From: Macrostomum lignano
Lineage: Eukaryota
DNA: 64,000 nucleotides
Assembly (NCBI GenBank): GCA_002269645.1
Contig: NIVC01000469.1
Location: forward strand, 186,001 to 250,000
Direction: 5' to 3'
Part shown: one piece after another, positions 225 through 59,895 of the stretch
Layout of the letters: each line of letters begins with the position of its first letter
How positions within the stretch are numbered: the stretch's first letter is position 1
Translations under genes and position numbers: made by a program
Notes under the pieces: generated by a model
Told to the model about the DNA's origin: nothing
Database searches by the model: none
The model's input: the letters and a program-made list of their open reading frames with translations, nothing else

Positions 225-2025
225 CGGGGGAAGCGACTGGGGGGGTTATGGAAATAGGGGAAGAGACTGAGGGATTATGGGGATAAAAGAAGCGACTAAG
301 GGATTATGAGGATAGTGGAAGCGACTGAGGGATTATGGGGATAAGGGAAGAGACTGAAGCGATTAGGGGAATATGGAAAGCGACTGAAGGGTTTTTGGGG
401 AAGCGACTGGGGGATTATGGGGATAGGGAAGAGACTGAAGGGATCAATGGGGATAGAGAAAGAGACTGAAGGGATTATGGGGATTGGGGAAGAGACGGAA
501 GGGATCAATGGGGATAAGGGAAGAGACCGAAGGGATCAATGGGGATAAGGGAAGAGACCGAAGGGATCAATGGGGATAAGGGAAGAGACTGAAGGGATCA
601 ATGGGGATAAGGGAAGAGACCGAAGGGATCAATGGGGATAAGGGAAGAGACCGAAGGGATCAATGGGGATAAGGGAAGAGACCGAAGGGATCAATGGGGA
701 TAAGGGAAGAGAACGAAGGGATTAATGGGGATAGAGAAAGAGACTGAAGGGATCAATGGGGATTGGGAAGAGACTGAAGGGATCAATGGGGATAAGGGAA
801 GAGACCGAAGGGATCAATGGGGATAAGGGAAGAGACTGAAGGGATCAATGGGGATAAGGGAAGAGACCGAAGGGATCAATGGGGATAAGGGAAGAGACTG
901 AAGGGATCAATGGGGATAAGGGAAGAGACTGAAGGGATCAATGGGGATAAGGGAAGAGACCGAAGGGATCAATGGGGATAAGGGAAGAGAACGAAGGGAT
1001 TAATGGGGATAGAGAAAGAGACTGAAGGGATCAATGGGGATTGGGAAGAGACTGAAGGGATCAATGGGGATAAGGGAAGAGACCGAAGGGATCAATGGGG
1101 ATAAGGGAAGAGACTGAAGGGATCAATGGGGATAAGGGAAGAGACCGAAGGGATCAATGGGGATAAGGGAAGAGACTGAAGGGATCAATGGGGATAAGGG
1201 AAGAGAACGAAGGGATCAATGGGGATAGAGAAAGAGACTGAAGGGATTATGGGGATTGGGAAGAGACTGAAGGGATCAATGGGGATAAGGGAAGAGACCG
1301 AAGGGATCAATGGGGATAAGGGAAGAGACCGAAGGGATCAATGGGGATAAGGGAAGAGAACGAAGGGATTAATGGGGATAGAGAAAGAGACTGAAGGGAT
1401 CAATGGGGATTGGGAAGAGACTGAAGGGATCAATGGGGATAAGGGAAGAGACCGAAGGGATCAATGGGGATAAGGGAAGAGACTGAAGGGATCAATGGGG
1501 ATAAGGGAAGAGACCGAAGGGATCAATGGGGATAAGGGAAGAGACTGAAGGGATCAATGGGGATAAGGGAAGAGACTGAAGGGATCAATGGGGATAAGGG
1601 AAGAGACCGAAGGGATCAATGGGGATAAGGGAAGAGAACGAAGGGATTAATGGGGATAGAGAAAGAGACTGAAGGGATCAATGGGGATTGGGAAGAGACT
1701 GAAGGGATCAATGGGGATAAGGGAAGAGACCGAAGGGATCAATGGGGATAAGGGAAGAGACTGAAGGGATCAATGGGGATAAGGGAAGAGACCGAAGGGA
1801 TCAATGGGGATAAGGGAAGAGACTGAAGGGATCAATGGGGATAAGGGAAGAGAACGAAGGGATCAATGGGGATAGAGAAAGAGACTGAAGGGATTATGGG
1901 GATTGGGAAGAGACTGAAGGGATCAATGGGGATAAGGGAAGAGACCGAAGGGATCAATGGGGATAAGGGAAGAGACTGAAGGGATTATGGGGATAAGGGA
2001 AGAGACTAGGGGATTATGGGGAACC
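225..2025. repeat. 31-bp purine-rich minisatellite filling the HisRS intron
   Basis: Unit GAAGGGATCAATGGGGATAAGGGAAGAGACY repeated head to tail with variant units. Confidence 0.95.
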
Positions 2026-2047
2026 ATGAACCAAAGCAGTGACTCAC

Positions 2048-2389
2048 GGTGAGATCATAACGCAGACTCAGCAGTTCACCCCCCTGATCGCAGATATCAT
2101 AGATCAGTTTAGAGTCCTCTCCATATTTGCCGGTGAGCACCTCCTTTAGCTCAGCGCCGGGTGTCTCCAAGCACTCGGCGTCGTGACTTTTGAAAACGCT
2201 AACAATTTTTTGCAGCACATCCTCGCGAACGGACATCTGCACTGGCGGGCGATCGTGCATGCCTTTGGGCACTTTCAGCACCAGCTTCTGGCGCTGCTGA
2301 GGCCGCTGCTGCTGCTGCTTGGACTTGTCGCCATCATCAGGCTGTGCAACAACAGGAGCTTCACTAACAACTGCAGCATCGCTAGACAT
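2048..2389 (-). CDS. HARS: Histidyl-tRNA synthetase, first coding exon (from first in-frame ATG; frame stays open upstream to 2566)
   Basis: Translation [12 protein letters not shown]...[35 protein letters not shown] matches the eukaryotic HisRS N-terminal catalytic region; GTGAGT donor at 2047-2042; no WHEP domain seen. Confidence 0.95.
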
Positions 2390-2659
2390 GATTCTAATGC
2401 GCCCGGTTGATTGGTTGCTAGGAAACAGTATTGATTTGGTAATCTGTGACGCTGCAACCGCTAGTTGTCTGATTGATGCCGGCTTGTATAGCAGGCTGGA
2501 GGTCAGTGTTGTAGCTATAGTTGCATGCAATGTAGAGAAATAGCTCAATGCTTGCTTGTTATAATTTTAGAATGAGCTCTACTGGTGTGGTGGCCTGTGG
2601 GACATTAAACTAGCACTAGGGGCGCTGTGGGTTGAACATCATTGATAAAGATAGATCTA

Positions 2660-3192: not shown

Positions 3193-3465
<273 letters not shown>

Positions 3466-11398: not shown

Positions 11399-11614
11399 TC
11401 ATTCCGGCGCCGATGCGCGGCGTCGTTTCAGAATGCCGCCCAGCAGTCCGCGGTTATTCCGCTTCGAGTTGCTTAATTCGTCGCTTCCAGAAAGTTGCGC
11501 TCTTGTTCCACAACAAGACGACGCATCTTGAAAGCCCGAATACGAATGCAGTAGTTGCTACCAGCGTAGGAGGGAGCACACAGTTGTTGTTGATTTGTAT
11601 CGGACGTTTGACAT
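11399..11614 (-). pseudogene. Disrupted paralog of the secreted prepropeptide at 24356-24586
   Basis: ATG 11614; two compensating 1-nt indels (~11565, ~11528) restore MSNVRYKSTTTVCSLL-LVATTAFVFGLSDASSCCGTRAQLSGSDELSNSKRNNRGLLGGILKRRRASAPE*; as written, the ATG frame stops at TAG 11560-11558. Confidence 0.65.
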
Positions 11615-14012: not shown

Positions 14013-16689
14013 TTATTGGCGATCGCAACAATCGTAAAACTGTTCATAAACAAAACAGGTGCATTCGAAGCTGCAGTAATCACGATAGCGTTGCTGCAAA
14101 TCCGTAACTCCCAGGCTAGTGTCGTGGATTTCGTCGGCAAAATTTTTTATCATCTCGCCACACGAGTTAAGCTGCCTGACCCAAAGTTCTACCTCGGATG
14201 CAGAATTTTGTGATTGAGGCGCGGAGCCATCTGTGAGCCAATTAAACGGAGGAATTGAGCGAAGCCAATCAAGAAACGGTTTCTTGATCGAATCAAATAA
14301 ACTTATTTGCGTCTCATCCCTGGCGGGTGTGTAACTGTTCCTAAGTTTCTCGACATCAGTAATAGTTGTCTCGAAATCATCCTTGAAGCTCTGGACAGCG
14401 GATGAAAATTCGCCAATGGCCTGTCTGAACGAATCCAGCTTTTCCATGAATTCTGTGTGCTTATCCGGTGACGGGCTTTGTTGAAACTCCTGCAACAGCC
14501 TGAAGACTTCCCTGCTGTCCTTAGCATAAGTGGCAGCTGATAAGCGAAGTTGTACAACCGAGTTTGTTATCGCCTTTGTGTTAATTCCGGAGATCTCTAG
14601 CTTCGGAGCTACGTGGTTCCACCTTTCAGCTATTATTTCTAAATCATTCGGGTGTATACCTTTTTGCAGAAGCGATAGGGTTCTTGCGTCTTTGATGAGT
14701 TTAACGGCTTTTTTGTAAAAGAGTGTGATTTCAAAAGTTTTTTTTGCTCCGGCACTTTTAAAATCAGCAAGCTGCGCCTCTTCGGGCAGACTCCGAATCT
14801 TACTAAAGGTTTCGTTGAACTTTTTCGCAGAGAAAATTATCTTATATGTGACTCTCTCCCAAGAGGCGAATGACTTGCTTGTTGATCCAAATAACTGTCC
14901 TAAAGCGCTTTTCTCTGCGTTAAGGAAATCTAAGAACTTTTCACTCTCCGCCTTTCCCTTTAAAAGCTTCTCTGTGTGTAGGGGTGTTCGGGTCGGCCAT
15001 TTTTTCGGGGTTCGGGGTTTACCCCGAACCCGGTACCCCTACCCCGAACACCGAACCCCGTCCCGAACATTTCTTCTAACCCCGAACCCCGAACCCGGTA
15101 CCAAAACCCGACCCGACCCCGAACGTAACCCCGAACATTTTCACGCTTATTTTGGTCAATCATTTTAATAAATTCAGTTTTCAGTTTTCAATTTTTCAGT
15201 TTTCAGTTTTCAATTTCAGTTTTAAATTCAGTTTTATATATTGAGATGTGCCTTAACAGCTTCAACCACTTAGCCTTGTGGTTTTATTTCCCTTAGCTAC
15301 TCTACAACTAGGAAAATAAATATGAAACACTTCTTGCAATGGGATTGGGGTTGAGATGGAAGGAATACCAAGACCCAAGATCTAATAGTAAGATACATGA
15401 AAGTTCACAACTAAAATCAGGACCATTTCGTACCTATACTTACAACGAAATTGCTTTCATAGTAATATTACATCTATGAGTTTATTTAAGCTGCAAAAAT
15501 AGAGTACAATAAAATTAGATTATACCCTGTAGTGTAGATATCAGTAGAGATAGAACTAGAGCGATAAAGAGATAGCACAGATAAAACAATGATGCAATGA
15601 AACAGGAGAGTTAATCACAAATATATATTTATTTTTACTTTTGACTACAGTTAACAGTAAGTCAGTAGTGGTATAACAGAATTGCTATGTAAAAACTAAA
15701 GTGACGTCTTTACATAAAATTGTATGCTGATATGAGTAGGTAATCATTGTGATAATTGATTATTGGCGACTGATGCGTGGAGAATAATGGTGTATTTATA
15801 AATTTTAAGCTTCCTCATCCAATCCAGAAGTTCAGACCATGTTACACGTAGCACATGTAAAATTATTACTGAACGTAATTTTTTAAATCATCAACTGCAA
15901 GACTGAATGGGTCGAAAAACGACAATCGTTATTTACCAGAAAGTGTAAATGAATCCATGGTTCTATCTGCTATTTCCGTTTCAAATTGTATGTAAAATAT
16001 AACTTAAGTTGTACCTGAAACTCAATGCATATCTTTCGCATTGTGGATTTTGCATAAGGAGTAAAAAAAGTGCTTGAAAATACTCTTGAGAATGATAATT
16101 GTTCAAAACCCCGAAAACCCCGAAAACCCGGTGGCCAAACCCGACCCGAACCCCGAACCCGGTACCCCTACCCCGAACCCCGAACCCGACCCGGAACACC
16201 TACCCCGAACCCCGAACCCGGTACCAAAACCCGACCCGAAACCCGACCCGACCCCGAACCCCGAACACCCCTATCTGTGTGCTCGGTTTTGCTTTGCTGC
16301 TCCAGAAGCCAGATACAAATCTCTAGTTGGCTGCACAACAGACTGATCACCTGGTCTTTTGAAAGCTCCATTACTTTATTAAGTAGTTCGGCATTCTCAC
16401 CAAAGTCCGTTAGTCTGCTAAGAATATCATTGGCAATCTGTATGACTTTTCGAAGTTCCTGTTTAAATACGAAGAATTCCATTTTTTCAGGGACTCTATT
16501 TTCTTCCATTAGACCGTTGACCTGGATCTCAGCTACTGGCCTCAATATTTCACACAGGCTGGGTCTCACCTCAGTCAGCAGAAGTATGATTTTCAGTGCT
16601 GACGCGACAGCTTTAGCGTCGAATGACGGTTTGGGCTCCTCCGGCTTCGGCTCCGGCTCCGATGTCTTCTTGAACCATATATTGCCCAT
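14013..16689 (-). pseudogene. Intronless helical orphan gene A (457 aa after removing hAT insertion); paralog of 18640-19995
   Basis: ATG 16689 (MGNIWFKK...); deleting 14979-16273 plus one TSD joins ...KTEHT-EKLLKG... in frame; manual translation of 14970-14495 has no stop and runs into track ORF 14013-14495. Confidence 0.85.
14979..16273. mobile_element. 1295-bp non-autonomous hAT element (TAGGG termini)
   Basis: TIR TAGGGGTGTTCGGG / CCCGAACACCCCTA; TSD TCTGTGTG at 14971-14978 and 16274-16281; subterminal CCCGAACCC arrays at both ends; AT-rich noncoding interior. Confidence 0.95.
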
Positions 16690-18639
16690 AATATCTATTT
16701 TACTTTTGTTAGCAGCCTTGCAATGCAACTTGATATTGGTATGCCACAAAAGAGTCTGTGTTTGTTAAATAAGTAAGCATGAAACATCTCTCTCAACTTA
16801 TTTATAAGTTAAGAGAGATGTTATAAGTAAAATGAGTAACTATCCAATGTACAATGGCTTCTTTGAACGTCGCATAGCTCGTAGACGATTTTTTAACGTC
16901 TTATTCGTATCGCTACTATGGGTAGCACAATGCGCTTCGTGTATCGTTTTTTACGAGCTTAGCTACGATAAAAGTAATTAAGCCAATCAAACTCACGGCT
17001 AAAACTAAATCTCTGCGCGTGTTTTACAAGTCTGAATTACGAGTGTGCTCTGCTATCAACTCCCGCAATCAATCGTGAGCTTATGTTTTATGCATCGCAG
17101 CGGAATTTGATAAAATGCTGTGTAGGATGCAGTACGAGGCAGATCAAATGCAGTACGAGGTTCTTTACCAGTTACATGGTCAGTTTAAAGCAATTTTTTA
17201 AATATGAATACTCACGAGGAACAAATTAACGAAGATTTAGCTGAACATCCATGGTTTCAGGGGGACATGTGTGTTGCGGGCTCAAAGGGCGACAGTCGGA
17301 ACGCAGCTGACCTGCAGCTGACCCCTGAAACACAAAACCCAAATCAATTTCTGTACATGAATTCACAAACACATGACCGCTTGAAGAATCTAAACTGTAT
17401 GGCCTTTTTGGCCTCTCTGCAGAGATAATAGCCGGAACAATTATCGAAAAATGCTCGTAAGCAGCACTACTTTTAGTAGCACATAATCAAACAACAGGAG
17501 AGTCAATCGCCCCAATTTACGAGCTAAATATCTAAAAATGAACGATGCATTTGGTTCAATTTTGTTGACTAATAAACCAATAGTATATAGACTTTATATA
17601 GTGACTTTTTGAACTACATCTGCCGTGTCTGGAAGCTGGGCTGGGATCTGCACCCAAAAAACTTTTTTGCTTCATCTCTGCTCGGAAGTGCAACAAACCT
17701 ATTCGGTGAATTTTCTGTAGCTAACTGTGTACCCGGCGATTTGTCATTTTTAGTGTCGTAGAAATTGAGAAAATCACCCCGTTAGCTGGTAATTGATTCG
17801 CTGCAGAATGGCACGACCGATTTTTTAAGGAAATTTTGGGAAAGCTTTTAGCTAAAAAAATGAAGCCGAAAGTTGAGCTGCAGACAAAACGGTTAAGAAC
17901 CGACTGAACTGCAACAAGAGGCCACGGACATGTCAATAACGCAGAGTGCATCTTTCGAGCACAATCCAGAACCTGTTGTCCTTTTTATCTATCATCGTGA
18001 AAATTTTAATAGGAACCTTTGCGATCTTGATAGAATATTTTATTATAACTACTACTTATTAGTACTACTGTTTGATTAGGATGATTAGAAGTGGTTAGAT
18101 ATATTCTTATACAAGCGTAGCACTTGCAAAACGAATTTTTATCGAAGAAGCTGCAGCTAAAGTAAAATGAAAAGTAATAGCCTGGGAGCATAGTGTAGCT
18201 ACTTTTGAGCATTTGTTTTAAGCGGACAAGACGGAAAAGCATTTCAACTTCAAATTCAACGCATTTGAACAATAACAATAATCTAAAAAAGGTTAAATAT
18301 TACACACCTTGATTTTTAATTTATAATGGTACGTCGTAATTGAAGTATGATATAATTGGTTTCATCAAACCCAAACTTCTGTTTCTCTAAAATTTCTGGT
18401 GTGACACGCCAAAGCCGTCGAGAATTAGGAGGCTTTCCGCAACCTTAAGGGCTTCAATATCTGGTGTCTTGGTCTACCAGGTGGGTGCCTCTGTCTCTAT
18501 ACTAAGAGGTGGCAAAAGTTGAACTTCTAAAGCCAAACGGACCATGTTCTTTAAACACATACTCGTAAGAGGTTTCAAAACAGAATTAAGAATAATAAAA
18601 GTGTTCGAGTCAGGCTTCAAAACAGACGGACAAGGACAG

Positions 18640-19995
18640 TTAGTGCGCATCGAAGTACAAGTCACCACCTGAATAGTAACAACCTCTGTCGGTTGCGATG
18701 CTGCGATGCAACTCCTTGACTCCCTCGAAGCCAGTGCGAGCTTCTTCGGTAATTTCTATTATCCGCTCGAGAAAGCATCTTAGCAAATTATCGCAGACAA
18801 CAACCGGCTCTTCCCTAGTGACCATTTGACATACGAGTTTTCGTATTTTCGACCAAATCCATTTAAAAGGGTTGTTGGTAAAGCCTTCATCGTTTGTAGA
18901 ATCCCGAAGTTGGATTTTTCCGACTGCTTCGATCGTTTTCTCTGTATTTTCCCGCAAAGCATTGACTTCGGAGCACAATTCGTATCTCTGTTTCTTGAGC
19001 AGTTCGAGTTTATCTTTTAATTTTCTTTGCATCTCAGGCGTTGGAGCTTTCTGGAATTCTTTCATCAGATTGCAGACCTCTTGATTGTATTTTCCAACGG
19101 TGACAGATGCTGAACCCAGTTGTTTAATAGAGCTTGTTACTCTTTCGGAATGGATTTTCAAGCTTGGAAATGATTTTAGCCATTCGCTCGCGTGATTCCA
19201 TTCTTCGGTTAGTTTTTGGTATTGCAATTGCTGATGACTGCTCTGTATAATTGATAAGTTTCTTACAGTTTTTATTGTCTGCGGCGTTTGGATGCTGCTG
19301 TCACCAGCACATCCTGTAGTGCGCTGTGTCGTTCCGCAGCCCCATCCAGTCGCCGCGTCAAGCATAAATGTCGACTGGATCAAATCAGCCACATCTTTGC
19401 TCTCAAAGTCGCACAAGCGAGCCTCTTCCGTCAACTTCGGTAGATCCGCCAGGCAGCTGTTAAACTGATCCACAGATGACATAACCTGGAGTGCGGCTTT
19501 CTTCCAAAGCATGCATGTGAGCGTGTCTATGCCGAAATGAAAAAAGTTAAGCCACGTGTCAAGAAACTGAAGCAGCTCGTCGCCCGCTTCCTTTGCGTTG
19601 AGAAAAGTTTCTGTAAGTTTCTTTCTGTTTGTGTCTTCTAGAAGCCAGATGCAAATCTTCAGCTGACTGTTCAGTAGCTCGGCCAGCACTGTCTCGTTGG
19701 GGCAGCCGCTTTTCAGTTGTAAATTGATTTGTTCGAACTGCTCCAGTTTGTCATAAATATTTTTGGCAGTTTCCACGACTTCGACCAGTCGATTTTTGAA
19801 CATTACAAATTGATGCTTGGTGGAAATGTTGGTATTATTATTAAAATCCTGGATCAGCTCATCCATTGAAAGCGATACGAGAGGCTTCAGGCACTCGACC
19901 AGGCGGAATCTCACTTCGTCGAGCCGAATAATAACGCTTGCTGTCGGCCTGGTGGCCTTAGAAACGACCGACGGCTTCGATTGCGAGCTTCCCAT
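18640..19995 (-). CDS. Intronless 451-aa predicted alpha-helical/coiled-coil protein of unknown family (gene B), N-myristoylation motif
   Basis: Long non-repetitive ORF with real ATG; MGSSQS fits MGxxxS; shares motifs with gene A (SQLKICIWLLE/SQLEICIWLLE, EEWNH/ERWNH, EFQKAPTP/EFQQSPSP). Confidence 0.85.
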   Translation of the reverse strand: MGSSQSKPSVVSKATRPTASVIIRLDEVRFRLVECLKPLVSLSMDELIQDFNNNTNISTKHQFVMFKNRLVEVVETAKNIYDKLEQFEQINLQLKSGCPNETVLAELLNSQLKICIWLLEDTNRKKLTETFLNAKEAGDELLQFLDTWLNFFHFGIDTLTCMLWKKAALQVMSSVDQFNSCLADLPKLTEEARLCDFESKDVADLIQSTFMLDAATGWGCGTTQRTTGCAGDSSIQTPQTIKTVRNLSIIQSSHQQLQYQKLTEEWNHASEWLKSFPSLKIHSERVTSSIKQLGSASVTVGKYNQEVCNLMKEFQKAPTPEMQRKLKDKLELLKKQRYELCSEVNALRENTEKTIEAVGKIQLRDSTNDEGFTNNPFKWIWSKIRKLVCQMVTREEPVVVCDNLLRCFLERIIEITEEARTGFEGVKELHRSIATDRGCYYSGGDLYFDAH

Positions 19996-20539: not shown

Positions 20540-21705
20540 TCTGTCTGCCTGTCTTACTAGTCTGTCTTCATAATGCTGTCTGCCTGTCTTACTAGTCTGT
20601 CTTCATAATGCTGTCTGCCTGTCTTACTAGTCTGTCTTCATGACGCTGTCTGCCTGTCTAACTAGTCTGTCTTCATGATGCTGTCTGCCTGTCTAACTAG
20701 TCTGTCTTCATGATGCTGTCTGCCTGTCTAACTAGTCTGTCTTCATAATGCTGTCTGCCTGTCTTTACTAGTCTGTCTTCATAATGCTGTCTGCCTGTCT
20801 TTACTAGTCTGTCTTCATGATGCTGTCTGCCTGTCTTTACTAGTCTGTCTTCATGATACTGTCTGCCTGTCTTTACTAGTCTGTCTTCGTGATGCTGTCT
20901 GCCTGTCTTTACTAGTCTGTCTTCATGATGCTGTCTGCCTGTCTTTACTAGTCTGTCTTCATGATGCTGTCTGCCTGTCTTACTAGTCTGTCTTCATGAT
21001 GCTGTCTGCCTGTCTTACTAGTCTGTCTTCATGATGCTGTCTGCCTGTCTTACTAGTCTGTCTTCATGATGCTGTCTGCCTGTCTTACTAGTCTGTCTTC
21101 ATGATGCTGTCTGCCTGTCTTACTAGTCTGTCTTCATGACGCTGTCTGCCTGTCTAACTAGTCTGTCTTCATGATGCTGTCTGCCTGTCTAACTAGTCTG
21201 TCTTCATGATGCTGTCTGCCTGTCTAACTAGTCTGTCTTCATAATGCTGTCTGCCTGTCTTTACTAGTCTGTCTTCATAATGCTGTCTGCCTGTCTTTAC
21301 TAGTCTGTCTTCATGATGCTGTCTGCCTGTCTTTACTAGTCTGTCTTCATGATACTGTCTGCCTGTCTTTACTAGTCTGTCTTCGTGATGCTGTCTGCCT
21401 GTCTTTACTAGTCTGTCTTCATGATGCTGTCTGCCTGTCTTTACTAGTCTGTCTTCATGATGCTGTCTGCCTGTCTTACTAGTCTGTCTTCATGATGCTG
21501 TCTGCCTGTCTTACTAGTCTGTCTTCATGATGCTGTCTGCCTGTCTTACTAGTCTGTCTTCATGATGCTGTCTGCCTGTCTTACTAGTCTGTCTTCATGA
21601 TGCTGTCTGCCTGTCTTACTAGTCTGTTTTCATGATGCTGTCTGCCTGTCTTACTAGTCTGTCTTCATGATGCTGTCTGCCTGTCTTACTAGTCTGTCTT
21701 CATGA
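20540..21705. repeat. 35-36-bp minisatellite (~33 units)
   Basis: Unit GCTGTCTGCCTGTCTTACTAGTCTGTCTTCATGAT; the variant pattern recurs at ~500-bp spacing. Confidence 0.95.
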
Positions 21706-21707
21706 TA

Positions 21708-22115
21708 CGAGAGATATGAGAGGAGAGAGGAGTGGGAGAGATATGAGAGGGGAGAGGAGTGGGAGAGATATGAGAGGGGAGAGGAGTGGGAGAGAGATAT
21801 GAGAGGGGAGAGGAGTGGGAGAGAGATATGAGAGGGGAGAGGAGTGGGAGAGATATGAGAGGGGAGAGGAGTGGGAGAGATATGAGAGGGGAGAGGAGTG
21901 GGAGAGATATGAGAGGGGAGAGGAGTGGGAGAGAGATATGAGAGGGGAGAGGAGTGGGAGAGATATGAGAGGGGAGAGGAGTGGGAGAGATATGAGAGGG
22001 TAGAGGAGTGGGAGAGATATGAGAGGGGAGAGGAGTGGGAGAGATATGAGAGGGGAGAGGAGTGGGAGAGATATGAGAGGGGAGAGGAGTGGGAGAGAGA
22101 TATGAGAGGGAGATG
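21708..22115. repeat. 27-29-bp GA-rich tandem repeat
   Basis: Unit GAGATATGAGAGGGGAGAGGAGTGGGA. Confidence 0.9.
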
Positions 22116-23789
22116 ATATATCATGAGACCGCATCACTAGCTAGATATTAATCAGATTCTATCACTAGTGTCCCTATAGCAAAGTGAGAACAAAAACTTT
22201 TACAAAGACAGCGCAATAGTTACTGATTAGTTTTATTGTACCGAATCATACGAGCGTAATGGTTCTCATCACAATGGTTCTCTGAGCTAAGTGTGTCAAA
22301 AATGTCAACCATCTGACCTCTTACTACGCTCGTAACTCGGCAGCTTATTAATATCAAAGAAAAGGTCTTGATTAATACCAAAAAAGATTTATAGCTCTTG
22401 CAAAACGAATTTTTATCGAAGAAGCTGCAGCTAAAGTAAAATAATAGCGTGGGAGCATGATGTAGTTATTTTTGAGCATTTGTTTTAATCAGACAGAAAA
22501 GACAAACAGTAAAATTCTTATTTCAACGCATTTCAACAAGAATAATCGAAAACAAGTTTTCGCATTATTAAAAAACCTTGCTTTTTGATTTGAAAAAGTA
22601 CGAAATACATTATAAAGGTAACTTATATTTCTTGTAGTACTATAGCGAATGAAGTCTCTGCACTGAGGCGGAAGGCCTTTTAATTTCATAGATGGTTTGG
22701 CAGCGAAGATTTTGCGCTGCATTGCGCGTGTATTTATATAATAAACAGCGCGAGATTATTGAGGGGCCAAGGGAGGTGCGAACCGGTGGCGTGGCGTGAT
22801 TGGCTACGCCAACCCCCCTGGCTTAGCGAGCCGGCTAGCGCGGTGCGCAACCACCCCACCTCAGCCAGACAGAGGTTGGCGGGGGGTTTCCAGTGCGGCT
22901 GCACTGGTGCTGCCGGTCGCGTAGTCTGGCCGCCACAGCACTTAAATAATCGGTAAGATTCCCAGCCAATTATTTATTCTCATCTTTACATACGACCCTC
23001 TCCCAGTTGCAGTCAACCCCTTCACAGTGTTCTGAAAAATCATCTGACAAAACTTGCTCGCCCTTGCTGTGTGATCACTCACTCACTCCATCACTCCATT
23101 TCTTCATTTTCGCTCGCCCACCCGTTTTGCTTGCTACTGTTTGACCCTTAGTCTACCTGACTCCCCTGAGTGATGTCACATCCTACCTAAATTGACTCGT
23201 CCCCATCCACTTCTTTATTTTTGCACACGATCTCCACGTGATTATCTAAAAAGCACTATTTTTAGCAACGGTACAGTGACGTCAGAACTCCTGATGGCCA
23301 GAGTGAGACTGCCATGGCCATAGCCTTGGAGAGCATCACGTGATTAACCTTGTTTGACATTATTTTGCAAGGCCAGTCGAGAGGAAGCAAAAATTTGTGG
23401 AATTCTGTTGAACCTTGAGCGCTTGTATAGGTGCGTTCTCAAGCTCATACCGCTTGCAGAATTTAACTGGGACTTTTGGCCTCCATTGGACGAGAAAGAG
23501 TCGAACACTACAGAGATCATCACTTTAAAAAACGTAATTACGTAATTATTTACGCTTGTAGGTGGCACTACTATTAGTAGCGCAATATCAAATAAAAGCA
23601 GAGTCAATCACCCCAAGGGATTTTATAGGGACTTTCTGAACCTTTGAAGCAAATCGTATTTGATAAGCATAATAGGTATTGGCTAAATACAATTAGCAGT
23701 GTGATGTTTAACTATGTTTAACTACTGAAGTACTTGACTTTAGCTGCAGGGGCTCCGGGCATCCGGATACAGCGAGGAGACGTCGCCGC

Positions 23790-24065: not shown

Positions 24066-24355
24066 TCGGTTGAGTCGAAGTTGGCTGGCTCAACCATACA
24101 TTATATTGTAATTTGTTGACTCTTGATGGGAACAATGTCGTATTTTTTTAACAACACTTGACAAATATATAAGAGTACGTACATGTAGATTCAAAGTAAC
24201 AAAAGCAGATCTTCTCTGATTTATAGATAGTTATGCAAAGTTTATTTTTCGTGTTTGTAATAATATTAGTCAGAATAAGTTTGCGTTTATTGCGTATTAA
24301 TGGTTATGAAAAATAGCAGAGCGATCCATCTGTCAGCCTGACCAATCAAGAGCGC

Positions 24356-24586
24356 CTATCCCTGCATCCCGTAGGTGTTGAGGAAGTTGCCGCCTTGACG
24401 CTTGGCGTGACGCTTCAGCATGCCGCCGAGAATGCCGGCCCGCTTGGAGTTCCGCATGTCTTTCAGGGACTGGCGCTGCCGGTCGATCATCGGCGACGCG
24501 TCTTTGGCGTTGATGAACGCATCGGAGATGCAAACAGCGAAAGCGGCCATTGCTACTAGAAGCAGAATTGCTTTTGTTGAGAACAT
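24356..24586 (-). CDS. 76-aa secreted prepropeptide (neuropeptide- or antimicrobial-peptide-like precursor)
   Basis: Signal peptide MFSTKAILLLVAMAAFAVCISDA; three KR sites; ends QGGNFLNTYGMQG-stop; AACAATG start context; AATAAA on minus strand at 24291-24286. Confidence 0.85.
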   Translation of the reverse strand: MFSTKAILLLVAMAAFAVCISDAFINAKDASPMIDRQRQSLKDMRNSKRAGILGGMLKRHAKRQGGNFLNTYGMQG

Positions 24587-25329
24587 TGTTTAACGAAGGA
24601 AGTTCTAGTCAATGTTAGAGGGTTGACAATCAATTGTGATGAAGCTAGTGCTCAACTGGCGCTATGCGCTTCTATAAATGCAATTTTCAGACAAGACAGG
24701 TGCGCGATAATGAGCGGAAGAAGTCAACTACATCTGCCGTGTCAGTCCGGAAGCTGGGCTGGGATCTGCATCGGGTACTCCCGGAAGTGTAACAATTTGC
24801 TTCTGTGAATTTTCTGTAGCTGACTGCATTGCTCGGTAATTAATCATCGTTAGATTAGACATTGAAGAAGTCAACTCTTCAACTAAAATGTGATCCGCAC
24901 TGGCTTTGTAGAATGGCTCGACCGATTTCCCCAGAAAAAATCGGACAATTTCCAGCCATTTTTTAGCAAAACTTCAACCGATAATATACGAGCGTAGTTA
25001 TAAATACGAGCGTATTAAAAAGGATAAGAACCGACTGAACGAGATGACACTGTAACAAGAGCTGCGGCTGTAAGGCCGTGAGGCTTTGAGGGAAAAATTA
25101 GATTAGATACCAGGTATGTACGTACGCTCGTACAAATCTACCATTGTATTCATTTGATGGCATCCAAAAGTTTTTGAGTTCGACCACTTTCCCACAATAC
25201 CGCGCCCTAAAATTTCACCAAACCTTAATTCCATAAGTTTTTAACGGGCATATAAAAATTCAAGTGCTCAGCTTTAAGAGAAGCAGTGCAATCTGCAATT
25301 GAAACTCAGTTTTCAGCCGCCGGCCAGCC

Positions 25330-25490
25330 ATGGCCGCCGAACTGTCGATACGCGACATCCGCGCCATAATTTTCTACAATTTCAAGCGCGGCCTCACGAC
25401 GCAGCAGTGCCATGAGAAGATGCAGGCAGCTCTGGGCAATTCTGCGCCTTCGACGTGCACCGTCCAGAACTGGTACCGCGACCTTTGGGC
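25330..25490 (+). mobile_element. Truncated mariner transposase fragment (N-terminal HTH)
   Basis: IRAIIFYNFKRGLTTQQCHEKMQAALGNSAPSTCTVQNWYR matches the mariner transposase HTH; no DDD domain follows. Confidence 0.85.
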
Positions 25491-26304
25491 GGCGGTAGAA
25501 TTCATGGGTCTTCATGATACTGGCTGTCTCCCCGCCCAACCATTACGAGCGTACCCACGATCCCCAAGTTTGTGGAATCTTGACTCTTCTAAAACTGAAC
25601 TCTTTTGATGTGGAAAATTCTAAACTGACTACTAGTGCCAGTATTAAAGTATCAGAATTGCAGATTTTATAAATCAATAGAAATCCACGAATTCAAACAC
25701 AACACAGGCTTGCTTCCTGTTGGGTCTCATAAAGCAACGTCGTAGGGCGCAACCGAAAAGATGAAGCTTGCTGAATTCGAAACCCTTGGGGATGAAAGAG
25801 AAGGAAATGTTCACCTGAGTCAGTACTGCGCAGGAAGGCTGTCGGATCACGAATCGGATCAATATTCTGGGATTTAAGGTGAAACTTCTTATATCAATAT
25901 TTATTATTCATTATTTTACAGGTGCAAATTATTACTAAACACGAAGACCAACAAAAACTAATTTTCAAGACACAAAATTAAATGCAAAATTAATTTTATA
26001 AAATTTGTTATTGTAAAATGGAAACCATGTGGGTAGCTTTATTTTGGACACAAAGTTCTCTTGGAAGTTTTGTAAATGGAAATTGTTCACTTAGTCATTT
26101 TTTCGGCATATTCTAACAGGAACAGGAAACTGGTATGCGAAACCGAAGTAACCCCCAAATTTTATGCAACGTTAGTCAAAGACATTATTGAGATGTGGCG
26201 AAAGTTGAGTTAATTCAAACCATTCAGCCGCATCAGCTTGAATAGAGTCAATCCGAAGATTCTCTTAGTTAATAATGATATTTTACAATCGTTAAGGGAG
26301 ACGG

Positions 26305-26850: not shown

Positions 26851-27439
26851 AGTACAATTTAGAAATCTCTTATGGCTCTATCCGGTCAGGTATTTCACAG
26901 TCAGGAAGAGTGGGGGATCAGGGGCGTTACTACGAGAGCCAGCGTTCCGCACTGCTCAGTCCTTAGACTGACCGATCTAAATTCTGAGCAGGGGGTTTCT
27001 CTGACATGAGTGTGTCAAAAATGTCAGCCATCTGACCTCCTACTAACCTGAAAGCTTAACAATTTCAGAGAAAAGTAATTATACAGCCCAGTCCAAACGA
27101 CCCCGGTCATTATTGACTAAAATACGGGTTACAGTGCCGTACAGTCAACGATGTCACTGATTGAGTCATCCTTCATGGAATGAGCTGGCTTGCAGAAGTT
27201 TGACGCTTTTTTGCTGCTTTGCCGCGGGGCACAGAGGGGGAGACACTTGCGCCGAGTCAGATGGCGGTTGCGTCATGGCTCTGTCAAAAGCTGCAGCGAT
27301 AATCAGATCTGAGACCCGCGTGCCTTGACAGTCCGCTTCAGTGAGTCCATTCAGCTCTGGACTCACCGTGCCGCGCTCTTCTGCTGCGCGTGTTGCCTTT
27401 GTTTGCTTGTCACGGAAACTGTTGTCACTTGCTTGTGCG

Positions 27440-27642
<203 letters not shown>

Positions 27643-28265
27643 AAGCTCCCAGAAACCGAAGACTGCCTCATTGGCCGAGCCAGAAGGCAGCCAATAGCCA
27701 ATAAGCAGCCCGTACCAAAAGAAGCCGCCATTTAGTGGCAAAGAATAGTCAATCCAGAGGCAAAAACCAACGCAGAAATCAAGCAGAAATTCACTGACTG
27801 CTCTAAAGATTCTTCACTAATCGGTGAGTGCGGGTGGGCATTGAACACATTTTTTGCGGCTTTGAGTTTGAGATTCTGTCCCAGTTTATCTGGAATGCTG
27901 GAGTACATTCGGGGTTTCTATGGCGATCCCCCCATGTTGTCTGTCAAAGAGCACCACGTCTTCTTTTTTCAATTTTCCGCTTTGAAATCTGCCAGGTGAC
28001 GCGACGTGTCAAGAAAGCTGCACGAGTTTACCGTTGACGCTCGCTTGATGAGGCTAAAAGGGAATTGATGCTGGGAATGTCTGCGCCTGCGTGTGCGTCA
28101 GCTTGGCGTTTGCAAATAAGGATGTTTCCCCAAAGCTTTTCTGTCTGTGCCGCGTACTTTAACAGTAGGAAATATCAATAGAAACTTAGTGCTGAGATCT
28201 GAAATGAGATAAAAATTTGTTGCGGACAACTTTGCAAGGCCACTTAGCAGTGGTATGCGGCGGTA

Positions 28266-28855
28266 GATGGCGGATAGTAGATAGCGAATAGTAGATAGCG
28301 GATAGTAGATAGCGGATAGTAGATAGCGGATAGTAGATTGCGGATAGTAGATAGCGGATAGTAGATAGCGGATAGTAGATAGCGGATAGTAGATAGCGGA
28401 TAGTAGATAGCGGATAGTAGATAGCGGAAAGTAGATAGCGAATAGTAGATAGCGGATAGTAGATAGCGGATAGTAGATAGCGGATAGTAGATAGCGGATA
28501 GTAGATAGCGGATAGTAGATAGCGGATAGTAGATAGCGGATAGTAGATAGCGGATAGTAGATAGCGGATAGTAGATAGCGGATAGTAGATAGCGGATAGT
28601 AGATATCGGATAGTAGATAGCGGATAGTAGATGGCGGATAGTAGATAGCGGATAGTAGATAGCGGATAGTAGATGGCGGATAGTAGATGGCGGATAGTAG
28701 ATAGCGGATAGTAGATAGCGGATTGTAGATAGCAGATAGTAGATAGCGGATAGTAGATAGCGAATAGTAGATAGCGGATAGTAGATAGCGGATAGTAGAT
28801 GGCGGATAGTAGATAGCGGATAGTAGATAGTGGATAGTAGATAGCGGATAGTAGA
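28266..28855. repeat. 14-bp minisatellite
   Basis: Unit GATAGTAGATAGCG. Confidence 0.95.
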
Positions 28856-29335
28856 CAGCAGACATATTTAACGGGCTAAGTTTTTCATTCATGTATATTG
28901 CTATGTGAAAAGTTACATTGGTCGGTTAGTCAGATTAGCACAGGTATACAACTTCACCGGACACAGTCAAAGATCAAAGAGTGTTCCCATCATTGCAACC
29001 GTAAACGGCGCATCTATCTAATTTCTCATAAGGCTTTTCCGACGAGAAGTTCAGTTTACAAAGAAACGGGGTAAACAGAAACAGACAGACTGGCTAACAG
29101 CTAGCTAGCTTGTGATTACGTAACACGAGTTGTACATGAGGGCCTGGGGATAGGGGGGGAGGAGCTCGCGGCGAGTCAGGCAGAAGATAATTTAGAGGGC
29201 TGAGGGGGACAGACAGTAAATAACGGGTTGTGCTGGGTCAGATTGCAGCTGGGGCCGCTGCGCTTTGAAGGGGGTGGCTGAGTATTGCTCTGAGCTCTGC
29301 TCTGGCAAATTGTTAATGACTGCGTAGCAGGTTGG

Positions 29336-30060
<725 letters not shown>

Positions 30061-30684
30061 TGTATTCACACAGAATGCGGCTGCAATTCAGACAAATGTG
30101 AAGCCAATTAAGTATCCAGACAGCCGGAGTCCAGCTTTACTAGAGCGACAGGCCGGCAGGCTCTGCATCTACCCCCCACTCACTCAATTCATCCTTGAGA
30201 ACAATTAACAAAGTTAGCGAAGCGAGAAAGTTGCTGCCCACCGGTTGCTGGACACAACACAAGAGGCCTCCTCTAGAAGACAGAAATTTGCAGAGTGATC
30301 TGGGAAAAATCCTGCAACAGTTTGATGGGGGGGGGGCAGAAGCCTAATTCCGAATTCGGGTTGGGGCGGCTCAAGATGTCCTGCGGCCCATCATTGTTTA
30401 GTTTTAAAAAGGCCAACACAACTGGGTGTTGGAAACTTCGCACTTCGTTTGGCTCGCGCTATCTTCTTCTCTGACTTGTATAGTGCTGGCGTCCTGAATG
30501 TTTGCGCCCAGCTTCAGTTTATGCCTCATCATCAATCACTGCAACGCGAGATTTTTGGAAAATTGTAAAAATCTCTGAGGGAAAACTTCAGTTTGGAACT
30601 TCTGACAGGGAAGGCGCCTGCAGGGCGGATAAATAAACAGACGGCGAAGAGGGAAGCAGATGGCTACAGTGGGGCGACACGGGG

Positions 30685-36755: not shown

Positions 36756-39060
36756 GGCCAGACTAAAAAGACTTGTAAATTTATTACACTTCAAATTTAT
36801 GTGAATTTTGATAGGAAACCTGCGTATTGGAAAGACATTGACCCAAGGACTTCCGTAGTTTAAGGACGCAAAATTGAAAAAATGGCGAGGCTTATTAAAT
36901 CCACGAAGCTGGAACACAGTCAAGGACAACCAAAAGTTAAATTTATAAATCAAAAATTAAAGTTCTAGAGGTTCTTGCTAATTTATATATAGCTCCTGTC
37001 ATAAGGACCACTCAGGCGGGAAGCTACGAGCATATTTTTACAGTCTGACTTTTCCGCGACGCTATGACCTACTAGTCAAATCTACCAGTGTAAACTGAGT
37101 TTTTTATATACTTGCCGATAATTAAATTTATATTTAACAGTGTGTAATAGAATAGTGTGTAACGACGTTAATCTTATGTTCGCGAAATATTCAATTGCTG
37201 CTTGATATTTCAACATCAAAATAGTAAATAAATGTAAAATACAACCAATATCATCAACGTAGTTTTGTTGCAAAGAAAGGCATAAAGTAAGGCGGCATTT
37301 ATTGTTTTTTATTACACATGTTATTATATAATACGCGAGGAATTGCGATAAATAAAACCACATATATGTACTAGTTAATCCGTAATATTTAATACTGAGG
37401 AAGCCGCGGCATTAAGTGTTAATCGTAATAAAAATATTCTTGGCCGTAGCCGAACAGAGAGAGAGACACTCGCCGTAATTTAATCCGCAAAAAAGTGTTA
37501 AAACAGAATCTGCTGCTCAATAGTGCTTCAAGCGCTTTTTCGTATTTATAAGCAATAAATGTAAAATTAAAATTTTATCTAAGCGACCAGCGATTTGGAA
37601 AGGTAAAATTTAAGCGAACAAACACGCAGGCTAAACAGGAAAGCAGGTTATACATATGTTTTTGTTATATAAATGTGTGGTTGCTTTAGCATCCGGACAA
37701 ATCCATCGTTTTTAAAAAATACAAAACGAACTAACGTACTGCTGCATAAATAAATCCGGAAAATAAAAGAAAATGTACGTCTGTAACAAATCGCGAGGAC
37801 CTGCATTAGTTTCTAGCCTTAAAAAAACTTTAATAGCTTCCAGATTTAGCGGTTGAAATAAATTTACTTTGAATGTGCAACTAATTTCAATTGTAACGAG
37901 TCTACAAGGCGAGACACCAAGCGCCAAAACACGAACCAAATTTGAATATGCCAACTTATAACAAAAATACAAAAGAAGTCGCTGCACAACAAACCCCAAA
38001 CCTGAAAGAGTGGAACTGTTAAGCTCCCTCAACCGAAATAATTTTTGCTACGCAGACATTATAATTACTGATCATATAGCAAAATGAAACAAGAAAAATC
38101 ATATAGTCATAACGAATCAATATAGTCGAATCGAATACAAACTGAAATTTCACCCGCAGAGAGCAAATTATTTAAAATTAAAATTAAAATTAAAATAAAA
38201 AAATTTCCGAGCCATGCGTAAAATTGGTAATTACTATACAAGCATCCAGTTAGCTTAACCGAAAGTACATGTTTATAAAAATTTTATGGACTGTACACCA
38301 TTGCCAGCGAGTAACTTTTATTTGACTACTGTGAGTAACGTAGTAGGGATTTGAAAAGAAAATTAGAAGCGTGTGGCTAGAAAAATCTAATTAAAAATCT
38401 CATTAAAAGCTAGAACTTTATATGCAAGTCTTGTAGGCCAGCAGTATTTGCGGATTTGGATGATCATTTGGTACACGACAACAGAAACTTATTTCACATG
38501 TATTAATAACTTCTTAAAACAATATCTAATTTTATTTATTGGCAAATTATTTTGATTTGATTAACCAATAAATATAACATACCTACCTCGTTAAACATGA
38601 GCCAAAAGGAAATCAGTACAAATTATTTTATATATCACAAGATATATATATCACTACTAGACTAGAGGCTTTGTGCGGCATAGAGATATGAAGTTAAGTA
38701 AATTTGAATAGTTGCAAAACACGTCTGTGGATAGCCGCCTAGGTGTTTCCGTATTGTCTTAATTACTTTATTGCCTTTGAGTCACTGGCCGTGCCAGTCA
38801 ACAAATCGAGCCTTATGTTACTTTGCAATAAAAACCTCGATTTCTCTGAAGAGTGAAGTTTCGATGCTTTCTATCAAAAAGTCAGACACAGCTGGTAGAC
38901 CCCAAGCATAGCACTATACAATATAAATATGCTCTTACAGGGTGTACAGTGGGCCTGACTAGAACGTTTTTTCAAAAAATAGGCATTACTTACGACTTTC
39001 CATCAGCAACTTTTGAGAATAGGAAAGGCCATTGTAGCCCACAAAAAGCGAGTTAGTCAT

Positions 39061-59895
<20,835 letters not shown>

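What the first reader, a model, noticed from the sequence alone, without database searches (positions are those of the whole stretch)
24356..24586. Unrecognised prepropeptide with dibasic sites and amidation signal
Seen: a 23-aa signal peptide, a spacer, then KR-AGILGGML-KR-HA-KR-QGGNFLNTYGMQG-stop. Known: prohormone convertases cut at KR, C-terminal Gly is converted to amide, and N-terminal Gln cyclises. The predicted products are AGILGGML and pQGGNFLNTYGMQ-amide, which I cannot assign to a known neuropeptide family. Alternative inference: a single cut after NSKR yields a 26-aa cationic amidated peptide starting AGILGGMLKR. That layout and GIL/GLL start recall linear antimicrobial or skin peptides.
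Basis: partly seen in the sequence, partly recalled or inferred. Interest (0 to 1): 0.75.

Follow-up and report, generated by a model that had tools for sequence, protein, structure and literature searches.

The report
Orphan flatworm neuropeptide-like precursor gene
A small single-exon gene of the flatworm Macrostomum lignano encodes a 76-residue secreted precursor with the layout of a neuropeptide or peptide-hormone prohormone, has no relatives outside this species' own genome, and is a plausible but untested new signalling peptide.

Summary
Window 24356..24586 (minus strand) is a 76-codon ATG-to-stop ORF: signal peptide, about 26-aa spacer, then KR-AGILGGML-KR-HA-KR-QGGNFLNTYGMQG-stop.

The window is Macrostomum lignano DNA, about 97-98% identical to public contig NIVC01001953.1. 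The ORF looks like a real gene:
- It is a GC island (57% GC, GC3 0.74) in 26-37% GC flanks.
- Its frame scores best of six on a codon table from the window's filamin and HisRS exons.
- A stop lies two codons before the ATG, and AATAAA signals lie 65 and 110 nt after the stop.
- The combination of features is expected about 0.02 times per 64 kb by chance.
- A near-identical public copy carries a transcript-derived gene model, a "hypothetical protein, partial", cut short by a 38-bp frameshifting deletion.

No homologue exists elsewhere (word-indexed search, exhaustive phmmer over 1.84 billion proteins, Pfam). No motif matches the planarian prohormone catalogue.

Best reading: an orphan prohormone giving pQGGNFLNTYGMQ-NH2 plus AGILGGML. 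The 26-aa antimicrobial reading is disfavoured. It would require two perfect KR sites to stay uncut, the helix is poorly amphipathic, and the spacer is not acidic. Processing, cell type and function are untested. This is a new member of a known kind, of moderate interest.

The parts
24356..24586 (-). Complete single-exon CDS of the 76-aa prepropeptide, stop codon included
   Evidence: GC 0.567 and GC3 0.74. Best of six frames on a codon table from the window's filamin and HisRS exons, and rank 5 of 84 ATG ORFs of 50-120 codons.
24524..24586 (-). Signal peptide, residues 1-21 (MFSTKAILLLVAMAAFAVCIS); cleavage after residue 23 is also possible (24518-24586)
   Evidence: Heuristic h-region test and -3/-1 rule. 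Not run through SignalP.
24446..24523 (-). Pro-region or spacer, residues 22-47 (DAFINAKDASPMIDRQRQSLKDMRNS), net charge +1
   Evidence: The only two amino-acid differences from the public copy (K28N, K43E) fall here.
24440..24445 (-). Dibasic site K48-R49, with Arg at P5
   Evidence: Cleavage is inferred from prohormone-convertase specificity (established knowledge).
24416..24439 (-). Predicted peptide 1: AGILGGML (free acid, [M+H]+ 731.412)
24398..24415 (-). KR-HA-KR double dibasic linker (residues 58-63)
24362..24397 (-). Predicted peptide 2: QGGNFLNTYGMQ, expected as pGlu...Gln-amide ([M+H]+ 1311.579)
   Evidence: The modifications are inferred.
24359..24361 (-). C-terminal Gly76, the amide donor, followed by TAG at 24356-24358
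24286..24291 (-). AATAAA poly(A) signal 65 nt after the stop; a second one at 24241-24246, 110 nt after the stop
   Evidence: Function is inferred.
24673..24678 (.). TATA-like hexamer 87 nt upstream of the ATG (TATAAA on the + strand, TTTATA on the gene's strand)
   Evidence: Weak and inferred only.

Best explanation
This is a genuine, transcribed, single-exon gene of Macrostomum lignano that encodes a lineage-restricted secretory prohormone. The proposed steps, all inferred unless marked otherwise, are as follows. The signal peptide (residues 1-21 or 1-23) takes the protein into the ER. In the regulated secretory pathway a PC2 or PC1/3-type convertase cuts after K48R49, K58R59 and K62R63. A carboxypeptidase E-type enzyme trims the basic residues. 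Peptidylglycine alpha-amidating monooxygenase converts Gly76 into the amide of Gln75, and the exposed Gln64 cyclises to pyroglutamate. The products would be the pro-region peptide, AGILGGML, a His-Ala dipeptide, and the doubly end-blocked dodecapeptide pQGGNFLNTYGMQ-NH2. The dodecapeptide is the most likely bioactive product and would act as a neuropeptide or peptide hormone, presumably through a G-protein-coupled receptor. Shown here: the ORF and its motifs, its coding-like composition, the absence of homologues, and the existence of a transcript-derived gene model for a near-identical copy. Not shown here: cleavage, modifications, cell type, receptor and function.
For: The ORF and motifs are exact. 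The feature combination is rare by chance, at 0.02 per 64 kb and 0 of 200 with the C-terminal Gly. The ORF is a GC island with GC3 0.74 in AT-rich flanks. Its own frame is the best of six, and it ranks 5th of 84 ORFs, behind three ORFs with filamin-like sequences and an RPL38-like ORF. There is an in-frame stop just upstream, A at -3, and AATAAA at +65 and +110. The public protein BOX15_Mlig031290g1 is 96% identical. It comes from an annotation built only from RNA-seq-guided transcripts plus TransDecoder, and no larger gene overlaps it within 5 kb either side. M. lignano has a PC2 homologue expressed in the nervous system and GYIRFamide-type amidated peptides. Planarians have many lineage-specific small prohormones with the same architecture, spp-1 to spp-19. 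Each of the three KR sites also has a further basic residue at P5 (and Lys at P6 of the third), which I recall, untested here, as favouring convertase cleavage; none is followed by Pro.
Against: There is no direct evidence that the intact copy in this window is the transcribed one, because the annotated public copy has a frameshift in its signal peptide. No orthologue exists in any other species searched, so conservation and purifying selection cannot be shown. The two copies differ by only two substitutions, both non-synonymous, which gives no statistical power. The codon score is about 0 bits per codon rather than clearly positive. A genome of several hundred Mb should contain some chance ORFs with this pattern. 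AGILGGML is an unusual product: hydrophobic, uncharged and not amidated. No expression record for the gene ID was found in accessible supplements.
Confidence: 0.55

Rival explanations
1. It is a secreted gland product rather than a neuronal signal. The same precursor would be made in a non-neural secretory cell, such as prostate or seminal-fluid glands, epidermal or rhabdite glands, or pharyngeal glands. It would be processed by furin or PC-type enzymes and released to the outside or into a mating partner.
For: The architecture (signal peptide plus dibasic sites) is not specific to neurons. Macrostomum has many fast-evolving, lineage-restricted secreted reproductive proteins (titles and abstracts listed: PMC5977470, PMC7336406, PMC8662610). 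Being an orphan fits rapid evolution.
Against: A pGlu start plus a C-terminal amide on a 12-mer is the classic mark of regulated-pathway signalling peptides (established knowledge). No data here place the transcript in any gland.
Confidence: 0.15
2. It is a non-functional or very young ORF: a chance or recently arisen reading frame in transcribed DNA whose product has no selected function. The frameshifted public copy would show that the sequence is dispensable.
For: There is no homologue anywhere. One of the two known copies has a 38-bp frameshift. The only substitutions between the copies are non-synonymous. The codon score is near zero. A Mos1-type transposon relic lies about 750 bp upstream. 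Genome-wide, some chance ORFs with this pattern are expected (extrapolated).
Against: GC3 is 0.74, the ORF frame is the best of six, and several independent prohormone features coincide: the signal peptide, three KR sites clustered at the C-terminal end, Gln after the last KR, a terminal Gly, and nearby AATAAA signals. In a recently duplicated genome, loss of one copy is expected and does not argue against function of the other (describes 180 Mb of blocks at 95% identity or more).
Confidence: 0.2
3. It is a host-defence peptide. A single cut after NSKR would release the 26-aa cationic amidated peptide AGILGGMLKRHAKRQGGNFLNTYGMQ-NH2, which would act on microbial membranes.
For: The peptide has net charge +4, a Gly/Leu-rich N-terminus and a C-terminal amide donor. 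The layout of signal peptide, spacer, KR and peptide resembles amphibian skin-peptide precursors. Strings such as LGGIL occur in papers on some frog host-defence peptides.
Against: All four Lys/Arg lie in KRHAKR, that is two canonical convertase sites, rather than being spread along one helix face. The full-length hydrophobic moment is 0.23, against 0.45-0.67 for the short frog-skin reference peptides. Gly, Pro and Asn make up 31%. The spacer has net charge +1, not acidic. There is no sequence relative among known peptides.
Confidence: 0.08

Closest known systems
Lineage-specific flatworm prohormones (Schmidtea mediterranea spp-1 to spp-19 and npp genes; Collins et al. 2010, PMC2953531)
   Same: Both are small secreted precursors with a signal peptide, dibasic cleavage sites, Gly amide donors and no homologues outside flatworms. 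In planarians they are processed by PC2, and an M. lignano PC2 homologue is expressed in the nervous system.
   Different: There is no sequence or motif match to any of the 51 planarian prohormones in that paper's supplements. Neither the C-terminal motif YGMQ-amide nor the AGILGGML core is named in the literature searched. No peptidomic or expression evidence exists for this one.
GnRH / AKH / corazonin superfamily (for example planarian Smed-grh-1, QSYHFSNDWLP-amide)
   Same: The predicted product is also a 10-12-residue peptide with pGlu at one end and an amide at the other. An ungapped comparison with the planarian peptide gives Q1, F5 and N7 identical and an aromatic residue at position 9 (my own comparison).
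   Different: In that family the peptide follows the signal peptide directly and is followed by GKR and an associated peptide. Here it is the last 12 residues of the precursor, after a spacer of about 40 residues. The conserved Trp is Tyr here. Three identities in a 12-mer is within chance once many families are considered.
Amphibian skin linear cationic peptide precursors (temporin, aurein and magainin type)
   Same: Both have a signal peptide, a spacer ending in KR, a short peptide starting with Gly/Ala-Ile-Leu, and a C-terminal Gly amide donor.
   Different: The spacer is not acidic. The candidate peptide contains two internal KR sites. It is poorly amphipathic and rich in Gly and Asn. There is no homology, and the organism is a flatworm.

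Membership tests
Neuropeptide / peptide-hormone prohormone (generic class) | N-terminal signal peptide | tested here: met
   Basic n-region, uncharged 13-residue h-region, and -3/-1-compatible sites after residues 21 and 23. Heuristic only; SignalP was not available.
Neuropeptide / peptide-hormone prohormone (generic class) | Peptides flanked by dibasic convertase sites | tested here: met
   Three KR sites at residues 48-49, 58-59 and 62-63; none is followed by Pro.
Neuropeptide / peptide-hormone prohormone (generic class) | Gly amide donor at the C-terminus of a predicted peptide | tested here: met
   Gly76 is the last residue before the stop codon.
Neuropeptide / peptide-hormone prohormone (generic class) | Processing machinery present in the organism | tested here: met
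   From the literature: an M. lignano PC2 homologue is expressed in the nervous system, and a GYIRFamide-type nervous system is described (PMC4490696).
Neuropeptide / peptide-hormone prohormone (generic class) | Transcript present | tested here: inconclusive
   The gene model of the 96%-identical public copy derives from RNA-seq-based transcripts. Which copy is transcribed cannot be told, and no reads could be examined.
Neuropeptide / peptide-hormone prohormone (generic class) | Expression in neurons or endocrine cells, and mature peptides detectable | not testable with these tools
   This needs in situ hybridisation or a reporter, and LC-MS/MS.
GnRH / AKH / corazonin superfamily | pGlu N-terminus and amidated C-terminus on a peptide of 8-12 residues | tested here: met
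   Gln64 follows KR and Gly76 is terminal, which predicts a 12-mer. The modifications are inferred.
GnRH / AKH / corazonin superfamily | Peptide lies immediately after the signal peptide and is followed by G-K/R-R and an associated peptide | tested here: not met
   Here the peptide occupies residues 64-75 at the end of the precursor. Smed-grh-1 shows the canonical layout.
GnRH / AKH / corazonin superfamily | Conserved Trp near the C-terminus (position 8 or 9) | tested here: not met
   Position 9 is Tyr, and the peptide contains no Trp.
Amphibian-type linear cationic antimicrobial peptide precursor | Acidic pro-piece preceding the KR site | tested here: not met
   The spacer has net charge +1, or +2 with the later signal-peptide cut.
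Amphibian-type linear cationic antimicrobial peptide precursor | Mature peptide forms a cationic amphipathic helix | tested here: not met
   The full-length hydrophobic moment is 0.23, against 0.45-0.67 for short frog-skin reference peptides. The basic residues are clustered, and Gly, Pro and Asn make up 31%.
Described flatworm npp / spp families | Shared mature-peptide motif or precursor homology | tested here: inconclusive
   There is no motif match in the supplements of Collins 2010 or in a schistosome catalogue paper, and no homologue by HMMER. McVeigh 2009 and Koziol 2016, which used Macrostomum data, could not be read.

The most novel reading that the evidence does not exclude
pQGGNFLNTYGMQ-NH2 is the founding member of a new neuropeptide family restricted to Macrostomum or Macrostomorpha. 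It would be encoded by a very young single-exon gene that is being sorted out after the recent genome duplication: one intact copy, one frameshifted copy, and perhaps a decayed relative 13 kb away. The locus would then show the birth and death of a neuropeptide gene in a transgenesis-capable flatworm.
Probability: 0.3. Interest if true: 0.5.

Novelty: new member of a known kind. Interest (0 to 1): 0.35.

Why it matters
Flatworm peptide signalling controls reproduction, regeneration and behaviour, and most flatworm neuropeptides are lineage-specific and missed by homology-based annotation. This gene is absent as an intact protein from the public protein collections searched. Its only public counterpart is a truncated "hypothetical protein" from a frameshifted copy. 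If the predicted end-blocked dodecapeptide exists, it adds an orphan ligand to a model flatworm in which stable transgenesis and RNAi are available. Cell type, phenotype and receptor could then be determined quickly. On present evidence it is one more candidate prohormone, not a new principle.

Tried and rejected
1. Homology. Pfam gave no family at E up to 10. The word-indexed search of 5.8 billion proteins gave only the public M. lignano copy. Exhaustive phmmer over 1.84 billion representatives gave only that copy. The exact 76-aa product is not on record in public assemblies.

2. Literature. There were no full-text hits for the peptide strings, for the gene ID Mlig031290, or for a family named after an MQ-amide C-terminus; the only 'MQamide' string match was a paper on echinoderm SALMFamide precursors, which I did not open. 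No motif occurs in the Collins 2010 supplements or in a schistosome neuropeptide paper. McVeigh 2009 and Koziol 2016 are not held.

3. Expression look-up by gene ID in supplements of two M. lignano RNA-seq papers found nothing. One file was truncated when stored, so the absence is uninformative.

4. Second copy in the window. The site at 11401-11557 (-) shares NSKR...G[IL]LGG[IM]LKR, but it has no start codon or signal-peptide exon, its GC3 is 0.50, and no public protein contains it. Its significance is borderline. I did not count it as evidence.

5. The 38-bp difference from the public copy as an intron: rejected. No register of the gap gives GT...AG, and it is not a multiple of 3.

6. Known RNA at the locus: Rfam shows nothing above threshold in 22.5-26.5 kb.

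7. GnRH/AKH/corazonin membership: rejected on precursor layout and the missing Trp.

8. Disclosure. The operators' note (2) forbids this. That row is discarded, was not needed, and is not repeated.

Full report
**1. The observation**

On the minus strand, window 24586..24356 reads ATG...TAG and encodes MFSTKAILLLVAMAAFAVCISDAFINAKDASPMIDRQRQSLKDMRNSKRAGILGGMLKRHAKRQGGNFLNTYGMQG*.

- The N-terminus has a short basic n-region and an uncharged 13-residue hydrophobic core.
- The -3/-1 rule allows cleavage after residue 21 or residue 23.
- Three KR pairs lie at residues 48-49, 58-59 and 62-63.
- Gln64 follows the last KR, and Gly76 is the final residue.
- An in-frame TAA lies two codons before the ATG, which has A at -3.

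**2. Is it more than chance?**

Of 148 ATG ORFs of 40-200 aa in the window, only this one has a signal-peptide-like start and at least two KR. Markov simulations of the window give 0.02 such ORFs per 64 kb. None in 200 simulations also ended in Gly. Extrapolated to a genome of several hundred Mb, a handful of chance cases would still exist. I therefore looked for independent evidence.

- The ORF is a GC island: 57% GC, with 63-66% in its core, between flanks of 26-37%. GC3 is 0.74, close to the 0.765 of the window's filamin and HisRS exons.
- On a codon table trained on those exons, the ORF's own frame scores best of the six: -2.5 bits against -7.4 to -55.7. The ORF ranks 5th of 84 similar-sized ORFs, behind three ORFs with filamin-like sequences and an RPL38-like ORF. 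The absolute score is only about zero, so this support is moderate.
- AATAAA lies 65 and 110 nt after the stop, and a TATA-like hexamer lies 87 nt before the ATG.
- Rfam finds no known RNA at the locus.

**3. Where it comes from**

The only protein relative in 5.8 billion clusters is "hypothetical protein BOX15_Mlig031290g1, partial" of Macrostomum lignano. It is 56 aa long and 96% identical. It lies on NIVC01001953.1 of assembly GCA_002269645.1.

The window is 96-98% identical to that contig across most of the 10-kb locus fetched around the gene. It is therefore the same species: another assembly, an allele, or one of the recently duplicated blocks described for this genome.

The public copy lacks 38 bp inside the signal-peptide region. 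The gap is not a multiple of three and has no GT...AG borders. From its ATG that copy reads MFSTKAILRCVHQRQRR.... This explains why GenBank holds only a 5'-partial ORF. The window's copy is intact.

After the gap, the two coding sequences differ at two bases, both non-synonymous (K28N, K43E), and both in the spacer. That is too few differences to test for selection.

**4. Is it transcribed?**

The GenBank annotation of that assembly was made solely from genome-guided RNA-seq transcript assemblies, filtered by expression, with ORFs called by TransDecoder (PMC5730564). The gene model therefore implies transcription of this locus family. It does not tell which copy is transcribed. No larger gene overlaps it within 5 kb on either side. 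I found no expression record for the gene ID in accessible papers or supplements.

**5. Relatives elsewhere**

There are none.

- Pfam gives nothing.
- Exhaustive phmmer against 1.84 billion representative proteins returns only the public copy.
- None of the motifs (YGMQ, TYGM, NFLN, ILGGM and others) occurs in the 51 planarian prohormones of Collins et al. 2010, in a schistosome neuropeptide catalogue, or in the full-text library.
- Two catalogues that used Macrostomum data (McVeigh 2009, Koziol 2016) could not be read. A prior description there cannot be fully excluded.

**6. Mechanism**

The most economical reading is a classical prohormone.

1. The signal peptide takes the protein into the ER.
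2. A PC2 or PC1/3-type convertase cleaves after the three KR sites.
3. A carboxypeptidase trims the basic residues.
4. PAM amidates Gln75, using Gly76 as the donor.
5. Gln64 cyclises to pyroglutamate.

The products would be AGILGGML ([M+H]+ 731.412), His-Ala and pQGGNFLNTYGMQ-NH2 ([M+H]+ 1311.579).

The species has a PC2 homologue expressed in the nervous system, whose knock-down is lethal to juveniles, and it has GYIRFamide-type amidated peptides. Planarians have many lineage-specific small prohormones of the same build, most of them confirmed by mass spectrometry.

From established knowledge, a peptide blocked at both ends is typical of signalling peptides. All processing steps are inferences here.

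**7. The antimicrobial alternative**

The 26-mer would exist only if two perfect KR sites remained uncut.

- Its four Lys/Arg are all in KRHAKR.
- Its full-length helical hydrophobic moment is 0.23, against 0.45-0.67 for short frog-skin reference peptides.
- Gly, Pro and Asn make up 31% of its residues.
- The spacer has net charge +1 rather than being acidic.

I rate this reading at about 0.08.

I discarded that row and do not repeat it.

**8. Comparison with known families**

The predicted 12-mer loosely recalls GnRH/AKH/corazonin peptides: pGlu, an amide, and aromatic residues at positions 5 and 9. An ungapped comparison with planarian QSYHFSNDWLP-amide shares Q1, F5 and N7.

The defining precursor layout is not met. 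In that family the peptide follows the signal peptide directly and is followed by GKR, as in Smed-grh-1. The conserved Trp is also absent. It is not a member.

It works like, and belongs to, the generic class of prohormones. Within that class it is an orphan.

**9. Other rivals**

- A gland-secreted product rather than a neuronal one (0.15).
- A non-functional or very young ORF (0.20). Being an orphan, the frameshifted sister copy and the near-zero codon score keep this open.

**10. Verdict**

The anatomy is confirmed and the gene is probably real. It is best read as an orphan neuropeptide-like prohormone of M. lignano (confidence 0.55). It is a new member of a known kind. Interest is moderate (0.35), because lineage-specific flatworm prohormones are common and nothing here is mechanistically unusual. 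The decisive tests are simple in this model animal: read mapping, peptidomics and in situ hybridisation.

Noticed in passing
L001 4998-4999 (public contig NIVC01001953.1), corresponding to window 24529-24566: The public M. lignano copy of the gene lacks 38 bp inside the signal-peptide coding region. This shifts the frame, so from its ATG it reads MFSTKAILRCVHQRQRR.... That is why GenBank holds only a 5'-partial 56-aa protein. It may be a real pseudogenised duplicate or an assembly error.
   Followed up: partly
window 11401-11557 (-): A stop-free frame ends ...SGSDELSNSKR-NNRGLLGGIL-KRRR-ASAPE*. It shares NSKR and a G[IL]LGG[IM]L-KR core with the finding, 13 kb away on the same strand. It is the best non-self match in the window, and 1 of 60 shuffled queries reaches its score (tblastn E = 0.66). 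It has no start codon or signal-peptide exon, its GC3 is 0.50, and no public protein contains it. It is a possible decayed paralogue or a chance match.
   Followed up: partly
window 25330-25608 (+): A relic of a Mos1/mariner-type transposase N-terminus (Pfam HTH_48, E = 1.4e-10) lies about 750 bp upstream of the peptide gene.
   Followed up: partly
window 14013-14495, 16168-16749, 18640-19995 (all -): Three long ORFs share motifs such as LKICIWLLE and look like tandem paralogues of a protein of unknown function. The only Pfam matches are sub-threshold.
   Followed up: partly
window about 39000-59000 (-): A multi-exon filamin-type gene (Pfam Filamin repeat, E = 2e-38 for 40206-40895) has GC-rich exons separated by introns full of micro- and minisatellites.
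   Followed up: partly
window 2006-2548 (-) and 3196-3405 (-): A histidyl-tRNA synthetase exon (Pfam tRNA-synt_His, E = 1.1e-8), and a 70-aa ORF starting [30 protein letters not shown] that I recognise from memory as ribosomal protein L38-like. The second was not tested.
   Followed up: partly
window about 21300-22140, 27400-27700, 28100-28900, 29500-30100, 44100-44800, 47200-47900, 51700-52600, 53300-54600, 55100-55900: Long tandem-repeat arrays produce spurious long ORFs in several frames on both strands. They also inflate BLAST hit lists against the public contig.
   Followed up: no
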